Positions 19,859 to 41,724 of a stretch of 64,000 bases of DNA are shown here, piece by piece (within the stretch, counting starts at the first letter, position 1; every line of letters starts with the position of its first letter). The stretch is from IMG/VR virus record IMGVR_UViG_3300035703_000008, positions 124,001 through 188,000 of that record; one strand, 5' to 3'. Below the pieces are notes generated by a model. It saw nothing but the letters and a program-made list of their open reading frames with translations. It made no database searches and had not been told where the DNA came from. Made by a program: the position numbers and the translations under genes.

Positions 19859-20871
19859 GCAACCTTTTCCGCAAAGCCATAGTATTCACCGACATCCATT
19901 TTGGGCTCAAATCCAACAGCTTGATACACAATCAAGACTGTGAACGTTTTGTGGACTGGATCATCGCCACAGGCCGGGAGCATGGTTGCGAGACCGGCAT
20001 GTTCCTGGGCGACTGGCACCATCATCGTGCATCGATCAATCTACAGACCCTGAACTTCAGTTTGCAGGCCTTGGAAAAGCTGAGTGCGGCGTTCTCGCAG
20101 TTCTTCTTTATCCCAGGCAATCACGATCTCTACTATCGTGACAAACGTGACATCCATGGTGCAGCCTGGGCCCGTCACTTGCCCAATATCCACGTATGCA
20201 ACGACTGGTTCCAGGAAGGCGATGTCATAATCGCCCCGTGGCTAGTGGGCGATGACCATAAAAAGATTTCGAAGATGTCGGCCAAGTACATGTTTGGACA
20301 CTTTGAGCTACCGCACTTCAAGATGAATGCCATGGTAGAGATGCCGGACCACGGTGAGATACAAGCCGAGCACTTTGGACACTATGACCAAGTGTTTAGT
20401 GGACACTTCCACTTGCGCCAGCACAAAAACAACATCAACTACATCGGCAATGCTTTTCCGCACAACTTCGCCGATGCCGGGGACAGCCAGCGCGGTGCTA
20501 TGATCCTCGAGTGGGGGGCGGAACCGGAGTATCACGCCTGGCCGGACCAACCTCTCTACAATGTCTGGGATCTTAGCCATGTCATTGACAATGCTGAGAA
20601 AATTTTACGCCCGAACATGCATGTCCGAGTACAGCTAGACATCGATATCAGCTACGAAGAAGCCAACTTTATTCGAGAAACATTTGTGCAAAAATATACT
20701 CTGCGAGAGATGGCTTTGATCCCAAACAAGAGATCGGCCCTGGAAGAAGACATGGCACCCGGCGATGTAAAATTTGAATCAGTAGATCAAATCGTTATAG
20801 ATCAGATCACCAAGATTGAAAGCGAATTCTACGATCCTAAATTATTACTACAAATTTACAATACGCTATGA
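19855..20871 (+). CDS. Recombination endonuclease subunit, gp47/Mre11/SbcD-like
   Basis: Metallophosphoesterase motifs DIHFG, GDWHH, GNHD, GHFE, SGHFH. Confidence 0.92.
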   Translation: MSNLFRKAIVFTDIHFGLKSNSLIHNQDCERFVDWIIATGREHGCETGMFLGDWHHHRASINLQTLNFSLQALEKLSAAFSQFFFIPGNHDLYYRDKRDIHGAAWARHLPNIHVCNDWFQEGDVIIAPWLVGDDHKKISKMSAKYMFGHFELPHFKMNAMVEMPDHGEIQAEHFGHYDQVFSGHFHLRQHKNNINYIGNAFPHNFADAGDSQRGAMILEWGAEPEYHAWPDQPLYNVWDLSHVIDNAEKILRPNMHVRVQLDIDISYEEANFIRETFVQKYTLREMALIPNKRSALEEDMAPGDVKFESVDQIVIDQITKIESEFYDPKLLLQIYNTL

Positions 20872-22259
20872 TAGAAATCAAAGATCAAAATGTAGTCATA
20901 GCAGCCATGCCATTGATCGACAGCATGCACGCACCAATGGCGGCACCAGCTGTGCTGAAAGCATCTCTATCTCGTGCCGGCATCAAGTCTACAGCGTTAG
21001 ATCTAAATATTGAAGTATTAGTCAAAGTCCGATCCCACCATGAAGAAAAAGCCATTAGAAAATTCTTCAACAAACAGGAAGCAGAGGACTGGATAGTACA
21101 CGAAATATCCAAGATATTGTTATATTGTGCCAATCGAATTACTGCATTGAAACCCACAGTGATTGCATTGAGTTTGTTGACATTCCAGGCTCAAAATTTT
21201 ACTTTATGGTTATGCCTTTTGTTGCGCCAACTTTGCCCGGATGCAAGAATAGTAATCGGCGGCCCTGGAATAAAAAACCTAGTGGCTAACTTTGATGATA
21301 AGTTCCGAGATCTAGCATTGGAAAAAGGATTGATCGATCATTATATCACCGGAGATGGCGATCAAGCATTGATAGAATATGTAAAAGGCAATTATGACTT
21401 TCCCGGTATCAACACAGACCATTGGGAACCAGTCAAAGATTTAGATTCGTTACCGTATCCAGATTGGTCCGATTATAATTTTTATCTTTATTCGCAAACC
21501 TACATGCCTTTGGTTGATGCCAAAGGCTGCGTGAGAAACTGTGAATTTTGTGATATCATTGAGTTTTGGGAAAAATTCCAGGCTAGAAAAGCTGAAAATA
21601 TTTTCAAAGAAATGTTACATCAGATATCTCAATACGGCTATCGAGATTTTGATTTCAGAAGTAGTTTATCAAACGGCAATCTCAAAGAGTTCAAAAAATT
21701 GCTATCTCTGATGTATGAGTATAATCTATCTAAACCTTACAGACCAGAACAGATTAGCTGGAATGCATCATTTATAGTCAGACAAAAGAGTCAACACCCA
21801 GAATCGATGTGGCAACAAATGGGAGCTACTCATGCTACATTGAGTCTAGGCGTAGAAAGTGTGGTGCCTCACATCAGGCAGGATCTGGGTAAACACTTTG
21901 AAAACGAAGACATCGACTGGCACCTTGAAATGGCTAAAAAATACAATGTCAAGATTATCATGATGATCATCACCGGCTATCCAACTGAAACAAGAGAAGA
22001 TTGGGAATTTACCAAGCAATGGTTCAGAGATCGAGCTCAATATAAAGATATCATGACACGTCTTTTTTTGACCCCGGCTGGCATTTTACCCGGAACTGGC
22101 TTGCATAGGAATTCTGAATCGCATGGTATTATATGGATCGGGAAACCCAATATTGGAAATTGGCAAACTAAAAATATAGGCCGCGAAGAAAGACTAGAGT
22201 ATCATTCAGAATTGGTTTTATTGTGCAAAGATCTAGGATTCAATCTCGATGCTTACTAA
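20868..22259 (+). CDS. Cobalamin-binding radical SAM protein
   Basis: N-terminal B12-binding-like domain (IVIGGP, GDGD), KGCVRNCEFC CxxxCxxC, GVES, ITGYPTETREDW. Confidence 0.85.
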   Translation: MIEIKDQNVVIAAMPLIDSMHAPMAAPAVLKASLSRAGIKSTALDLNIEVLVKVRSHHEEKAIRKFFNKQEAEDWIVHEISKILLYCANRITALKPTVIALSLLTFQAQNFTLWLCLLLRQLCPDARIVIGGPGIKNLVANFDDKFRDLALEKGLIDHYITGDGDQALIEYVKGNYDFPGINTDHWEPVKDLDSLPYPDWSDYNFYLYSQTYMPLVDAKGCVRNCEFCDIIEFWEKFQARKAENIFKEMLHQISQYGYRDFDFRSSLSNGNLKEFKKLLSLMYEYNLSKPYRPEQISWNASFIVRQKSQHPESMWQQMGATHATLSLGVESVVPHIRQDLGKHFENEDIDWHLEMAKKYNVKIIMMIITGYPTETREDWEFTKQWFRDRAQYKDIMTRLFLTPAGILPGTGLHRNSESHGIIWIGKPNIGNWQTKNIGREERLEYHSELVLLCKDLGFNLDAY

Positions 22260-24988: not shown

Positions 24989-25507
24989 ATGCCATCACCA
25001 AGCAAAGCCAAAGGCAACTCGTTTGAACGACAAACTGCAGATTTTCTCACCAATCTCTACGGCGAAAAGTTCATGCGGGTGCCGGGCAGCGGTGCGTACA
25101 TTGGTGGCAAAAACACACACCGCAAGCAGTTCCTACACGAAGGCCAGATACGCAGTTTCAAAGGGGATATCATCCCCGGCGAAAGTTTTCCGCGTTTCAA
25201 TGCCGAGTGCAAATCCTACAAAGACTTTCCTTTCCATCAACTTTTTTCTGGCTCAGTTAAGATCCTGGACTCATGGATTGATCAATGCGTGGATGTCGCC
25301 GACGACGGTGACTTCAACATCATATTCATGAAGTTCAACAGAAAAGGCACCTTCGTAGCCGTTCAGGCCCAGCCCAACACTTCCCAACTAATTTTTACTC
25401 GGCATTTCAACTACACTTCCGGGCTTCGCGGACATTGGATGATCATGGATCATGACATGTTCTGGGAGCTCAACTCTGACACAGTCAAGGCAATCTGCAA
25501 GGCATAA
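24989..25507 (+). CDS. Holliday junction resolvase-like PD-(D/E)xK nuclease
   Basis: SKAKGNSFER...RVPGSGA...GDII...ECK pattern of Hjc-like resolvases. Confidence 0.75.
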   Translation: MPSPSKAKGNSFERQTADFLTNLYGEKFMRVPGSGAYIGGKNTHRKQFLHEGQIRSFKGDIIPGESFPRFNAECKSYKDFPFHQLFSGSVKILDSWIDQCVDVADDGDFNIIFMKFNRKGTFVAVQAQPNTSQLIFTRHFNYTSGLRGHWMIMDHDMFWELNSDTVKAICKA

Positions 25508-25509
25508 CA

Positions 25510-25964
25510 GGCAGTAAGGGCTCGCACAGGCCGATTTCTTGTGCCCTAGACCTGGACTTCGAGTCGCAGGGATGGAAGACCCACCGCGCCAGTGGGCACT
25601 CAACCACTACCCGCAAGGATGAAGATGGCAAAGACCTGCCGTTTGGTTGTTTGAACAGGATATAAAAGGCCCAATGAGGGGAGCAAAACCCCAGGCACAT
25701 GCGTGGTGACGGCGTACTACACATGTGTTGCCGTTGTGATAAGACGGAGTGAGCAGGTACCGGACAACCGCCTGCTTGGAACAAGTGCGTTCCGTAGCTC
25801 TAACGCTGTGTGACTGTGCAACTCGGATGATACCAGTTTTTTCTTAGCCCTTTGCTGGGCTAAGTGTGACCGCTTAATCTGGATGATACTGATATCTCGC
25901 TTGCGCTCGAAATAAATCAGTGATGAGCGCAAGCGAAATCACTAGAACTGCGCAGCAGTTCTCT
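25510..25964 (+). ncRNA. Candidate large structured non-coding RNA (~455 nt), family not recognised
   Basis: Largest intergenic gap in a tightly packed genome; about 14 consecutive stems with G-U pairs on the + strand, a GCAA tetraloop and a duplicated hairpin module. Confidence 0.7.
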
Positions 25965-25970
25965 TAAATA
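25965..25970 (+). promoter_or_regulatory. Late promoter TAAATA, 6 nt before ATG
   Basis: TAAATA-GATCCT-ATG, no SD. Confidence 0.65.
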
Positions 25971-25976
25971 GATCCT

Positions 25977-27230
25977 ATGAACGTTGACAAAAGCACTTTC
26001 TGTGCTGCTCCTTGGTTCCAAATCAAAAATACCACGCTTGGAAGTTACTGTAGCTGTTGCGAGATAGACCACGACAAAAGCACTTTCTCGGGCAACAAAG
26101 ATTTCGCTTGGCCCACGCATCTACCATCGCACTGGAACAACAGCGATTATGCTCGATACCTTAGGTCTGAGCTCACCAATGGTGTGCGTCTCCCCGAATG
26201 TCACAAGTGTTGGAGCAAAGAAGATGCTGGACAACAAAGTCTTCGACAAACTATCAATGACACCGTGGCTGGCAATCGACCTTTTGAATCTAGTTGGATG
26301 CAATCCTACTTTAGAAAAAAGCAAGATTACGAACATGATTTACTTTTGGCTGCCGATGTACAGGTCACCAATCTTTGCAACTTTGGCTGTGTGATGTGTG
26401 AGCCGGGTAGCAGCAGCCATCTCTATCGAAGATGGCGGAGAGATCAGGACCATCCGTTGATAAAAAAACAGTTGATGATCTTCCCCAACGGCTATCTTGA
26501 TCAGGTGAAAGAAACATACATCAACAGAAACAACTACGAGCTACTGCAACACGTGATAGATCAATCTCCGCGGTACTTGAAGATCATAGGCGGTGAGCCT
26601 TTGTTGGATCAGCAGTTGATGTCTGTGTTGTGCAATCAGCTTCCCGAAGTCAAATCAAAAATCAAACTTTACATCACTACCAATGGGAGCCAAGATCTCT
26701 GCCACGCACAACAACGGTTGTCGGGTTACCAGGAAATTTTTTGGGTAGTCAGTCTAGAGTCCACGGGCAAACTGCAGGACTATGTGAGAAAAGGCAGCGT
26801 ATGGTCCGAGATCGAGCACAACATTGACAGGTTTGTAAGCGAACACAGCAGTCAACACCTTTACATAGCCTATGTGATACAGAGTCTCACATTGGCTGGG
26901 CTGCCAACATTGTTGGAATGGGCCCAGCAACGCAACATTCCAGTGGCTACCAGTTTGCTGGCCAAACCTGAATTCATGGATGTTAGATCGTTGCCCACGG
27001 AGATGAAATCAAAGTTGATTGATCAATTGTCGCAGGCAACAAAGTATTCGATACCGCTGGAGATACAAAATCCAGCATCTGTCAATATTGCAGGGTTGTG
27101 CGAGCTCATCGGGCGCACCCAGTACGATAGATCTGCCATGTTGGATCTACGAGAGTGGTTGGATTGGTACGATCCCGACCAGCAATGGCGAGACATCATT
27201 CCCGAGTGGGCACCATATTTCTCGGAGTAA
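25977..27230 (+). CDS. Radical SAM protein with N-terminal SPASM/twitch-like Cys cluster
   Basis: FCAAPW..CSCC..ECHKCW..E, NLCNFGCVMC, GGEP, TTNG. Confidence 0.85.
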   Translation: MNVDKSTFCAAPWFQIKNTTLGSYCSCCEIDHDKSTFSGNKDFAWPTHLPSHWNNSDYARYLRSELTNGVRLPECHKCWSKEDAGQQSLRQTINDTVAGNRPFESSWMQSYFRKKQDYEHDLLLAADVQVTNLCNFGCVMCEPGSSSHLYRRWRRDQDHPLIKKQLMIFPNGYLDQVKETYINRNNYELLQHVIDQSPRYLKIIGGEPLLDQQLMSVLCNQLPEVKSKIKLYITTNGSQDLCHAQQRLSGYQEIFWVVSLESTGKLQDYVRKGSVWSEIEHNIDRFVSEHSSQHLYIAYVIQSLTLAGLPTLLEWAQQRNIPVATSLLAKPEFMDVRSLPTEMKSKLIDQLSQATKYSIPLEIQNPASVNIAGLCELIGRTQYDRSAMLDLREWLDWYDPDQQWRDIIPEWAPYFSE

Positions 27231-41072: not shown

Positions 41073-41208
41073 AAAAATATTTATTCCTGGATTATTTTTC
41101 GTAAATCTATGTTAAATACTATCAACGTATTCTGCGTTTTATGCGGCGATTAATACCCACCGCGTACCGGATAGAACCCGGATCGGACTTCTTTTAAGGA
41201 GAAAACAA

Positions 41209-41724
41209 ATGGGACGTCCTCTCAAGATCAAGAAAACTACAACCAAAGATGTTGGTTTTAACAGCTTTGACCAGCTAGAAAACCCAGTTTACCCGGCCAC
41301 TCTCAACACTACCCAGTTCTTGGGTGTAGTAGGTGGCGCCAACGCTTCTGTGGCCACTACCAGCTATCCAGTGGTCAAGTGCCAGGTTTTTGGCGCCGGC
41401 GAAAGCGCCGAAGAAGCAGGCTACATCATCCGCCAAAAAGGTTCTACCACATATCTGGTGTATGGTCAGACTTCGGGCAACACCTTCCAGTGCATCTTGG
41501 CCAATCAAGCCACTGGAAACCTCACAGCCGGCAACATGAACATCGCTATTTTTGCCGGCGACAGTTCTGATATCCTTGTCAAGAAGCTCACAAACAAATG
41601 GGCCTTAGACTACAGCGACAATCGTTATGTGATCAACTTCTTCAGCGACGAAGGAACTGAGATCAAATCGGGAACACGCGGCAACACCAACCCCCTCGCG
41701 ATCACAGAAAACTATACTTCTTAA
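41209..41724 (+). CDS. Virion structural protein (head decoration-like candidate)
   Basis: MGRPLKIKK start, GYIIRQKG...YLV; strong TAAGGAG SD; TAAATA 41113-41118. Confidence 0.6.
   Translation: MGRPLKIKKTTTKDVGFNSFDQLENPVYPATLNTTQFLGVVGGANASVATTSYPVVKCQVFGAGESAEEAGYIIRQKGSTTYLVYGQTSGNTFQCILANQATGNLTAGNMNIAIFAGDSSDILVKKLTNKWALDYSDNRYVINFFSDEGTEIKSGTRGNTNPLAITENYTS

What the first reader, a model, noticed from the sequence alone, without database searches (positions are those of the whole stretch)
25808..25889. Duplicated 26-nt hairpin module with compensatory changes and T-loop-like caps
Seen: GTGTGA-CTG-TGCAACT-CGG-ATGATAC (25808-33) and GTGTGA-CCG-CTTAATC-TGG-ATGATAC (25864-89). Flanks are identical, inner stems differ but both still pair (CTG/CGG, CCG/TGG), both loops are 7 nt, and a perfect 8-bp hairpin separates them. 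Known: a 5+2 loop such as UGCAA-CU is the T-loop motif; paired T-loops bind the tRNA elbow in RNase P, T-box and L1 stalk; GA-rich internal loops are often protein-binding kinks. Inference: two equivalent binding modules. Alternative reading: constant-N10-constant units acting as a bipartite guide, as in box C/D RNAs.
Basis: partly seen in the sequence, partly recalled or inferred. Interest (0 to 1): 0.7.

Follow-up and report, generated by a model that had tools for sequence, protein, structure and literature searches.

The report
Paired repeat modules in phage RNA
The two 26-letter repeats are real, conserved parts of a large, mostly undescribed structured RNA of T4-like environmental phages. 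They are neither T-loops nor guides, but they change in lock-step (same letter in both copies), which suggests the two copies touch each other or are read as a symmetric pair.

Summary
GTGTGA-N13-ATGATAC occurs exactly twice in the window and in the 209-kb phage record, at 25808-33 and 25864-89, with a perfect 8-bp hairpin between the copies.

The modules lie in a 469-nt gap after a PDDEXK/RusA-like gene of a T4-like myovirus. The first 141 nt of the gap are Rfam's Polynucleobacter-1 RNA. The modules belong to an unmodelled 3' domain (module 1, hairpin P2, module 2, P4, P5) found in over 200 environmental phage contigs, always on the + strand. P2, P4 and P5 show abundant compensatory changes.

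Module consensus is RUGAC, 4-6 variable nt, then A-YYY-R-GAUGA-W.

- **T-loop reading:** fails, because the required U is not conserved.
- **Guide reading:** fails, because only 4-6 nt vary and no targets exist.
compatible with the data but weak and never doubly compensated.

The new result is that variable positions are kept identical between the two modules. Position 24 is U/U, A/A or G/G in 190 of 191 elements. Position 18 is A/A or G/G in 186 of 191, with about 30 independent co-changes. Neighbouring positions stay module-specific.

This excludes gene conversion and argues against a shared Watson-Crick partner inside the RNA. It points to an in-register, non-Watson-Crick pairing of the two modules, or to a symmetric reader. 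Function is unknown.

The parts
25508..25972 (+). Whole conserved structured non-coding RNA region. It fills the gap between the PDDEXK/RusA-like gene and the next gene. The true 5' and 3' ends are not mapped.
   Evidence: MFE z-score -3.6 on the + strand. Relatives show blastn/nhmmer conservation over the full length. Helices carry G.U pairs, which fits the + strand only.
25519..25652 (+). Polynucleobacter-1 RNA motif (Rfam RF01718), the 5' third of the RNA.
   Evidence: cmscan 118.4 bits against a gathering score of 37, full-length model match.
25794..25812 (+). 3' strand of a predicted long-range helix with 25508-25525 that closes the 5' domain. It ends at the start of module 1.
   Evidence: MFE pairs are listed. 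By eye in the alignment the two strands co-change (AACA/UGUU, GGCA/UGCC, GCAU/AUGC, ACAG/CUGU). My automatic test was uninformative.
25808..25833 (+). Module 1. It consists of a 5' strand RUGAC (25810-14), variable nt (25815-20) and an 11-mer ACUCRGAUGAW (25821-31). R18 is 25825 and W24 is 25831.
25834..25838 (+). Tail of module 1 (CAGUU). It can pair with 25812-16 (GACUG), which would make the 11-mer a hairpin loop (helix P1).
Evidence: In a register-free duplex test, each sequence's own tail pairs better with its own 5' segment than other sequences' tails do (-5.1 against -3.85 kcal/mol, median rank 0.21).
25843..25864 (+). Hairpin P2 (8 bp, 6-nt loop) between the modules.
   Evidence: I9. 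A hairpin is present in 147 of 147 relatives, mean 9 bp, with 60 distinct arm sequences and 71 G.U pairs.
25864..25889 (+). Module 2. It consists of a 5' strand RUGAC (25866-70), variable nt (25871-76) and an 11-mer AUCURGAUGAW (25877-87). R18' is 25881 and W24' is 25887. The core AUCURGAU is self-complementary.
   Evidence: No closing helix with its tail was detected.
25894..25908 (+). Optional arm (ATCTCGCTTGCGCTC) complementary to the apex of P4 (25925-39). This is an alternative to P4.
   Evidence: I1, 15 nt, 93%. A related UCGCUUCGCUC element occurs in many relatives (by eye, about half of those listed) but does not co-vary with the P4 apex (by eye).
25919..25943 (+). Hairpin P4. It has a 6-bp lower stem, a tandem G.A/A.G internal loop (GA...GA), 2 bp and a GNRA loop (GCAA).
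   Evidence: RNAalifold finds compensatory changes at all but one P4 pair. Found in 126 relatives with 45 distinct arms; the apex G-C changes to A-U in 12-15 sequences.
25944..25962 (+). Hairpin P5 (8 bp, GNA triloop). It has no U-tract.
   Evidence: (I11), 47 and 58: 125 relatives, 45 distinct arms, loops GUA, GAA and GCA.
24989..25507 (+). Upstream gene for a PDDEXK_15 / RusA-like nuclease. This is the syntenic anchor of the RNA.
   Evidence: Pfam 2.4e-25 and PHROG 244. 552 relatives in IMG/VR.

Best explanation
The two 26-nt units are the paired cores of a roughly 170-nt 3' domain of a large (about 460 nt) structured RNA encoded by T4-like environmental phages. The 5' third of that RNA is Rfam's Polynucleobacter-1 motif. 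Each module follows the 3' end of a helix (module 2 follows P2; module 1 follows a predicted long-range closing helix). Each consists of RUGAC, 4-6 free nucleotides and an almost invariant purine-rich strand A-YYY-R-GAUGA-W that has no Watson-Crick complement in the RNA. The two strands are held together in register and form a pseudo-symmetric, non-Watson-Crick (G/A-rich) tertiary core with P2 as the connector. As a result, any change at a tolerated position (18, 24, and also 3, 6, 13, 19, 22, 26) must be matched by the same letter in the other module. Shown: the RNA, its helices, the module consensus and the like-with-like covariation. Inferred: that the coupling is a direct RNA-RNA contact, and its geometry. 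Biological role: unknown. The RNA is probably a stand-alone or 3'-UTR-derived phage RNA at the border between the recombination-gene cluster and the convergent baseplate cluster.
For: - The RNA family is real and reads on the + strand. The element was found in 60 of 80 syntenic loci and in more than 120 further IMG/VR contigs. P2, P4 and P5 carry many compensatory changes and G.U pairs.
- In 43 of 45 relatives the next long ORF (at least 80 aa) is convergent; the six of these tested by Pfam are T4_baseplate or DUF6614 genes. The element is therefore not a 5' leader.
- Like-with-like covariation: position 24 is U/U 114, A/A 65, G/G 11 and mixed 1 of 191 (92 identical expected). Position 18 is identical in 186 of 191, position 26 in 139 of 191 (75 expected) and position 3 in 163 of 191 (99 expected). 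Mutual information is 1.03 and 0.90 bits, the top two of all column pairs.
- Position 18 changed about 30 times and position 24 about 25-27 times on the tree, almost always in both modules at once. For each position, four of the five sister pairs that differ do so in both modules, against 0.4 expected.
- Whole-collection scans by class: A/A at least 120, G/G at least 120, G/A 16, A/G 0.
- No other column co-varies with position 18 or 24 (maximum MI 0.17 and 0.33). Positions 18 and 24 are independent of each other.
- UCAUC, the complement of GAUGA, is present anywhere in only 18 of 147 RNAs.
- Identical positions interleave with module-specific ones: 17 differs, 18 is the same, 24 is the same, 25 is G against A in 136 of 191, and 26 is mostly the same.
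Against: - No structure probing, no mapped transcript ends and no 3D model are available. Complex prediction refuses RNA-only jobs.
- An in-register contact of two like strands is rare in natural RNA.
- Local secondary structure is ambiguous.
- One divergent lineage keeps module 2 with a degenerate module 1 (L060).
- A further group keeps P4-P5 behind a different upstream RNA (L077-L085).
- A symmetric protein reader cannot be excluded.
Confidence: 0.45

Rival explanations
1. The modules are two equal binding sites for a symmetric (dimeric or tandem-domain) RNA-binding protein, or another trans factor, that reads RUGAC...RGAUGAW. The modules stay alike because both must fit the same reader.
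For: There are two similar sites with variable spacing of 47-65 nt. The conserved single-stranded purine-rich strand has no partner inside the RNA. Co-change at many positions is what common readers produce.
Against: Both A/A and G/G (and U/U, A/A, G/G at position 24) occur in very close relatives, with roughly 25-30 independent switches at each position. A reader that accepts both letters gives no reason to avoid mixed states. No L7Ae-type gene is in the record, which is 60% complete. No conserved RNA-binding gene was identified next to the RNA among the neighbours scanned.
Confidence: 0.2
2. The loop of module 1 pairs with the strand of module 2 as an ordinary antiparallel pseudoknot: 25823-28 (UCGGAU) with 25877-82 (AUCUGG). 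Positions 18 and 18' sit in adjacent central pairs (C17-R18' and R18-U17'). Selection for an intermediate, constant stability keeps G/G or A/A and disfavours the too-strong A/G and too-weak G/A. Alternatively, the palindromic core of module 2 makes an intermolecular kissing dimer.
For: This is the best canonical register between the modules: six consecutive positions pair in 98-100% of sequences, except 17-18' at 44%. It appears in MFE folds of the window and of relatives. A/G, which would give two Watson-Crick pairs, is never seen, and G/A is rare. Palindromic kissing loops hold OLE and GOLLD oligomers together (bioRxiv 10.1101/2024.12.08.627333).
Against: It does not explain identity at positions 24, 26, 3 and 13, which lie outside that duplex. 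In the L068/L073/L076 lineage G19 becomes C in both modules, which breaks two pairs without compensation. Selection against the most stable state is an unusual requirement.
Confidence: 0.13
3. One reading: each module is a hairpin capped by a T-loop, and the pair docks a tRNA elbow.
For: The window copies have 7-nt loops starting U/C...AA. Many relatives have GUUCGAAC in module 1, which resembles a tRNA T-arm.
Against: Loop position 1 is U in only 48% and 27% of relatives. Loop length varies from 4 to 9 nt in module 1. The conserved part is the 3' strand beyond the supposed loop, and the closing pair 9-17 is mismatched in 29% of module 1 copies.
Confidence: 0.03
4. One reading: the units are constant-N10-constant bipartite guides, as in box C/D RNAs.
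For: RUGA and RGAUGA resemble D and C boxes. U4 and U21 or U24 could form the U.U pair.
Against: Only 4-6 nt vary and AACUC/AAUCU are fixed. Complements occur at chance level in the phage record. The box order is D-like then C-like with the 'guide' between them, the reverse of box C/D RNAs. There is no L7Ae gene, and the C-stem is not supported.
Confidence: 0.02
5. The repeats are a DNA-level feature (iterons or recombination sites), or are kept alike by gene conversion between the copies.
For: They are direct repeats 56 bp apart in a recombination-proficient phage. Identity of overlap regions is typical of recombination sites.
Against: Identical and module-specific positions interleave at single-nucleotide scale (17/18, 24/25/26), which no conversion tract can produce. 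Spacing varies from 47 to 65 bp. The intervening and following hairpins show RNA-type G.U covariation on one strand. Columns between positions 18 and 18' are not linked to them.
Confidence: 0.03

Closest known systems
Polynucleobacter-1 RNA (Rfam RF01718; Weinberg et al. 2010, PMC2864571)
   Same: The same transcript region. A full-length, high-scoring match lies 155 nt upstream in the same gap. The freshwater/estuary distribution also agrees.
   Different: The Rfam model covers only 141 nt and does not include the modules, P2, P4 or P5. The 3' domain also occurs where Rfam finds no Polynucleobacter-1 (14 of 20 relatives). The family was listed as a possible cis-regulator of Burkholderiales, whereas here it is a phage RNA followed by a convergent gene.
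Large ornate bacterial and phage RNAs (OLE, GOLLD, ROOL)
   Same: They are long, highly structured RNAs of unknown function, some phage-borne, held together by symmetric contacts. These include palindromic kissing loops and, in OLE, a symmetric helix of A-A pairs between equivalent strands.
   Different: There the like-with-like contacts are between two molecules. Here the coupling is between two paralogous strands of one molecule. There is no sequence or Rfam relationship, and oligomerisation of this RNA is untested.
Box C/D / kink-turn motifs
   Same: UGA on one strand and GAUGA on the other could form tandem sheared G.A pairs plus a U.U pair. A6/G22 changes to U/A (L037, L044) and C/G (L039) in both modules.
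   Different: There is no supported canonical stem next to a 3-nt bulge, the order of the boxes is reversed, there is no variable guide and there is no L7Ae gene.
Interdigitated T-loops (RNase P, T-box, L1 stalk)
   Same: Two similar small modules could pack with pseudo-twofold symmetry.
   Different: The defining U1 and A5 pattern and a fixed 5+2 loop are not conserved.
Parallel-stranded d(GA)n / poly(rA) homoduplexes (from my own knowledge of the literature; not checked here)
   Same: G.G, A.A and U.U homo-pairs between two identical purine-rich strands would give exactly the like-with-like rule seen at positions 18-24.
   Different: These are known from synthetic or homopolymer nucleic acids, not as an internal motif of a natural folded RNA. 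There is no structural evidence here.

Membership tests
T-loop motif | Five-nucleotide loop with conserved U at position 1 and A at position 5 (reverse-Hoogsteen pair). | tested here: not met
   Position 10 is U in 70 of 147 (module 1) and 40 of 147 (module 2). A14 is invariant.
T-loop motif | Fixed 5+2 loop closed by a Watson-Crick pair. | tested here: not met
   The U4-to-A14 distance is 10 or 11 nt in 129 of 147 and 7-12 nt overall in module 1. Closing pair 9-17 pairs in 71% (module 1) and 92% (module 2), with no double changes.
Box C/D guide RNA | C box RUGAUGA and D box CUGA in the order C...D', C'...D. | tested here: not met
   The strands read RUGA(C) then YRGAUGA, that is D-like before C-like. 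D position 1 is R, not C, except in one lineage.
Box C/D guide RNA | Variable 10-21-nt guide complementary to targets. | tested here: not met
   Only 4-6 nt vary. Complements are at chance level in the 209-kb record.
Box C/D guide RNA | An L7Ae-family partner is encoded or available. | tested here: not met
   PF01248 is not found in the phage record, which is 60% complete. Bacterial hosts were not testable.
Kink-turn | Tandem sheared G.A pairs next to a 3-nt bulge and a Watson-Crick C-stem. | tested here: inconclusive
   G5/A23 and A6/G22 are possible, and 6/22 co-change in three sequences from two lineages (L037, L044, L039). However, the -1 pair would be C7 with R18 (A in 55%), or the bulge would be only 2 nt.
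Polynucleobacter-1 RNA (RF01718) | Match to the covariance model above the gathering score. | tested here: met
   118.4 bits at 25519-25652. The modules themselves lie outside the model.
Any other Rfam 15 family | A match covering 25653-25976. | tested here: not met
   cmscan at E up to 10 on 25450-26050 returns no match covering 25653-25976 on either strand. The only other match is a weak minus-strand one at 25537-25600.
Symmetric kissing-loop oligomeric RNA (OLE/GOLLD type) | Self-complementary loop kept self-complementary in relatives. | tested here: inconclusive
   The module 2 core AUCURGAU stays self-complementary (A-U or G.U), but U17' never varies, so there is no covariation test.
CRISPR mini-array / type III antitoxin repeats | Identical full-length repeats with unconstrained or absent spacers. 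| tested here: not met
   The repeats differ at fixed signature positions, and the 'spacer' is a conserved hairpin.

The most novel reading that the evidence does not exclude
The two RGAUGAW strands (25825-31 and 25881-87), and perhaps the two RUGAC strands, run side by side in the same direction. They form a short parallel-stranded zipper of homo base pairs (G.G, A.A, U.U) inside a natural RNA, with P2 as the return loop. This would explain why every tolerated change must be mirrored by the same letter, why no Watson-Crick partner exists, and why the strands are purine-rich.
Probability: 0.15. Interest if true: 0.9.

Novelty: new variant of a known kind. Interest (0 to 1): 0.62.

Why it matters
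Large structured RNAs of phages are few and almost none has a known role. This one is abundant: hundreds of IMG/VR contigs from freshwater, subsurface and marine samples. Rfam knows only its first third.

The lock-step, same-letter evolution of two strands is not the signature that standard covariation tools look for. It is statistically very strong here: 190 of 191 at one position, and roughly 25-30 independent events at each of the two best positions. It therefore offers a clean, testable case of a non-Watson-Crick or symmetric interaction. Single against double swaps of two nucleotides should break and restore it.

It also shows that identity covariation between internal repeats can be mined as a signal for pseudo-symmetric RNA cores.

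Tried and rejected
- **Exact module pattern in IMG/VR:** 5 hits, all coding or single copies, so chance.
- **Downstream radical-SAM protein as anchor:** no relatives found. The window's gene order is the exception.
- **Isolate phages:** no blastn match. The nearest PDDEXK homologues (Salicola SCTP-2 and Pseudomonas PA5oct, below 47% identity) have no room for the RNA.
- **GTDB genomes:** 119 pattern hits, of which only 10 are real elements. About 130 chance hits were expected by my arithmetic.
- **Shared Watson-Crick partner:** no third covarying column, no UCAUC in the RNA and no enriched complement in the phage record.
- **Other pairings:** module 2 tail, upstream segment and the variable segments against each other show no signal in register-free duplex tests.
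- **5' closing helix:** my automatic test used badly anchored segments and was uninformative.
- **RNAalifold on the MAFFT alignment:** called only P4 and P5, and missed P2 because of gap placement.
- **Expression:** only DNA runs hold the locus. One lake RNA-seq assembly holds a relative's contig spanning genes and RNA, with no boundaries, so it proves nothing.
- **Hammerhead, hairpin-ribozyme, CsrA-site, ToxI, nut boxA/boxB and bridge-RNA resemblances:** considered from memory and dropped. Core letters, topology or gene context did not fit.

Full report
**Observation**

With 13 fixed flank letters and a 13-nt gap they are the only zero-mismatch matches in the window. They are also the only two matches in the whole 208,932-nt IMG/VR virus record from which the window comes. 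The perfect 8-bp hairpin between them is real.

**Context**

The window belongs to a T4-like myovirus. It carries baseplate wedge, portal and SbcCD-like gp46/47 genes. The modules lie in a 469-nt gap (25508-25976) after a PDDEXK_15/RusA-like gene.

Rfam places Polynucleobacter-1 RNA (RF01718) at 25519-25652 with 118 bits. It finds nothing else that covers the rest of the gap, even at E up to 10. That motif is known only from a table entry in Weinberg et al. 2010, as 'Burkholderiales, fresh water/estuary' (PMC2864571).

**Relatives**

- The PDDEXK protein has 552 relatives in IMG/VR.
- In 60 of the 80 loci fetched, nhmmer finds the region from module 1 to the last hairpin, always on the + strand.
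- A DNA pattern for the two conserved strands brings in more than 120 further contigs.
- In 43 of 45 relatives the next long ORF is convergent; the six tested by Pfam are T4 baseplate or DUF6614 genes. The RNA is therefore not a leader of a downstream gene. The window, with a radical-SAM gene inserted downstream, is the exception.
- Rfam's Polynucleobacter-1 is detected in only 6 of 20 relatives that have the 3' domain. In that subgroup the whole 300 nt upstream is conserved and full of co-varying helices.
- The full RNA is about 460 nt, and Rfam models its first third.
- No isolated phage in GenBank has it.
- Ten real copies sit in bacterial assemblies: a Haliscomenobacter MAG, small contigs of Nereida ignava CECT 5292, Rhodobacterales MAGs and single-cell genomes, and two further contigs I did not identify. 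The other 109 pattern hits there are chance.

**Helices**

- P2, between the modules, is a hairpin in 147 of 147 non-redundant sequences. It has a mean of 9 bp, 60 different arm sequences and 71 G.U pairs.
- P4 has a lower stem, a tandem G.A/A.G internal loop, two base pairs and a GNRA-type loop. P5 has 8 bp and a GNA triloop.
- In P4 and P5 together, 14 of 15 pairs show double compensatory changes in RNAalifold. Each has 45 distinct arm sequences.
- The G.U pairs fix the + strand as the RNA strand.
- A divergent group (L077-L085) keeps P4-P5 behind a different upstream RNA. The module domain is therefore separable.

**Anatomy of the modules**

Positions are numbered 1-26 from the first G. The consensus is:

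| Positions | Content |
|---|---|
| 1-2 | N1 N2 |
| 3-7 | R3 U4 G5 A6 C7 |
| next 4-6 nt | variable |
| 13-14 | N13 A14 |
| 15-17 | C15 U16 C17 in module 1; U15 C16 U17 in module 2 |
| 18-24 | R18 G19 A20 U21 G22 A23 W24 |

The CUC/UCU difference is a fixed module signature.

| Pair | Module 1 compatible | Module 2 compatible |
|---|---|---|
| 7-19 | 93% | 95% |
| 8-18 | 84% | 54% |
| 9-17 | 71% | 92% |

The variation seen is of transition type: A or G opposite U, C or U opposite G, and C opposite A in 41% of module 2. There are no double compensations.

For module 1, a register-free test shows that its variable segment pairs better with its own 3' tail than with other sequences' tails (-5.1 against -3.85 kcal/mol). 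That helix would present ACUCRGAUGAW as a hairpin loop. Module 2 has no such helix. Local secondary structure therefore remains ambiguous.

**T-loops and guides**

- A T-loop needs U at loop position 1, and that position is U in only 48% and 27% of sequences. Loop length also varies in module 1.
- A guide needs a hypervariable stretch with targets. Only 4-6 nt vary, and complements in the phage record are at chance level.
- The box-like elements are in the wrong order, and no L7Ae-family gene is present.

Both readings fail.

**The main new result**

The strongest correlations in the whole domain are between the same position of the two modules, and they are identities, not complements. In 191 non-redundant elements:

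| Position | Identical in both modules | Expected if independent |
|---|---|---|
| 24 | 190 (U/U 114, A/A 65, G/G 11; one mixed) | 92 |
| 18 | 186 (A/A 92, G/G 94; G/A 5) | 95 |
| 26 | 139 | 75 |
| 3 | 163 | 99 |
| 13 | 96 | 58 |

- Rare changes at positions 6, 19 and 22 also occur in both modules at once.
- On a tree built from the rest of the RNA, position 18 changed about 30 times and position 24 about 25-27 times, nearly always in both modules together.
- For each position, four of the five sister pairs that differ do so in both modules, against 0.4 expected.
- Scans of all IMG/VR by class give A/A at least 120, G/G at least 120, G/A 16 and A/G 0.

**What this excludes**

- No other column of the RNA follows position 18 or 24.
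- The columns lying between the two sites are not linked to them, so plain linkage is out.
- Positions 18 and 24 vary independently of each other.
- Identical positions interleave with module-specific ones: 17 differs, 18 is the same, 24 is the same, 25 is G against A in 136 of 191, and 26 is mostly the same. No gene-conversion tract can do this.
- GAUGA has no Watson-Crick complement inside the RNA: UCAUC occurs in only 18 of 147. None is enriched in the phage record.
- A reader that tolerates either letter gives no reason to avoid mixed states.

**Interpretation (inferred)**

Only an in-register juxtaposition of the two strands puts position i next to position i' at several places at once. 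I therefore favour a direct, pseudo-symmetric, non-Watson-Crick contact between the two modules, with P2 as the connector.

The boldest form is a short parallel zipper of homo-pairs. Milder forms are two hairpin-like modules packed along a common dyad.

An ordinary antiparallel pseudoknot (16-21 with 14'-19') is the best canonical pairing. It could explain position 18 through selection for constant stability, but it cannot explain position 24. It is also broken without compensation in one lineage. A symmetric protein reader remains possible.

**Comparison and novelty**

The locus is a member of the Polynucleobacter-1 family, but the module domain is not described in Rfam. The nearest analogies are the large ornate RNAs OLE, GOLLD and ROOL, whose assemblies rest on symmetric contacts, including an A-A helix between equivalent strands.

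The modules are not members of the T-loop, box C/D or kink-turn families by the tests above. I rate this as a new variant of a known kind: a large structured phage RNA with an unusual and very clean evolutionary signature.

**Limits**

- Transcript ends and expression are not shown. Only a relative's contig turns up in one lake RNA-seq assembly.
- The tree may be blurred by recombination.
- The second data set was collected with a pattern that fixes G19, G22 and the CUC/UCU signatures. Those invariances rest on the smaller protein-anchored set.
- No 3D prediction could be run.

Noticed in passing
window 41123-41211 (+): Rfam freshwater-2 RNA (RF02980, 68.8 bits) lies directly upstream of, and overlaps by 3 nt, the start of ORF 41209-41724. 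This is a second environmental RNA motif in the same phage.
   Followed up: no
window 25986-26001 and 26073-26088 (+): An exact 16-nt direct repeat GACAAAAGCACTTTCT lies inside the radical-SAM gene 25977-27230. It encodes the same short peptide twice (D2).
   Followed up: no
window 20868-22259 and 25977-27230 (+): Two radical-SAM genes flank the recombination genes. One, with a weak sub-threshold B12-binding-domain hit, is inserted between the sbcD-like and sbcC-like genes. The other follows the RNA and has no detectable relatives in IMG/VR by the pattern search.
   Followed up: partly
window 25894-25908 / 25925-25939: A 15-nt arm is complementary to the apex of P4. A long helix can therefore replace P4, and it is the MFE form in the window. 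A related UCGCUUCGCUC element is present in many relatives (by eye, about half of those listed) but does not co-vary with the P4 apex. It could be a switch or a decoy.
   Followed up: partly
L077 3507-4000 (and L079-L085): More distant relatives have a different structured sequence after the same gene but end with the same P4-P5 pair. P4-P5 may therefore be a shared 3' cassette, such as an end, processing or stability signal.
   Followed up: partly
L218, L227 (Nereida ignava CECT 5292); L219, L224, L231, L261; L270, L285: True copies of the element sit on small contigs of an isolate assembly and in Rhodobacterales and Haliscomenobacter MAGs. These are probably co-assembled phage and give hints to hosts.
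   Followed up: partly
upstream of module 1 in L023, L061, L040, L041 and others; window 25797-25807: The segment before module 1 reads CUCUUUA or GCUCUAAC, which resembles the boxA element of antitermination sites (from memory). In the window it is also the 3' strand of the predicted closing helix.
   Followed up: no
window 25400-26100 against run X20: A lake-water RNA-seq assembly holds a 2.6-kb contig of a relative (below 90% identity) with the same gene order, including the downstream radical-SAM-like gene. This is no proof of transcription.
   Followed up: partly
L054, L055, L060: In one lineage module 1 is replaced by a plain hairpin (UCCG-GACUCGU-CGGA). Module 2 is intact in L060 and degenerate in L054 and L055.
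   Followed up: no
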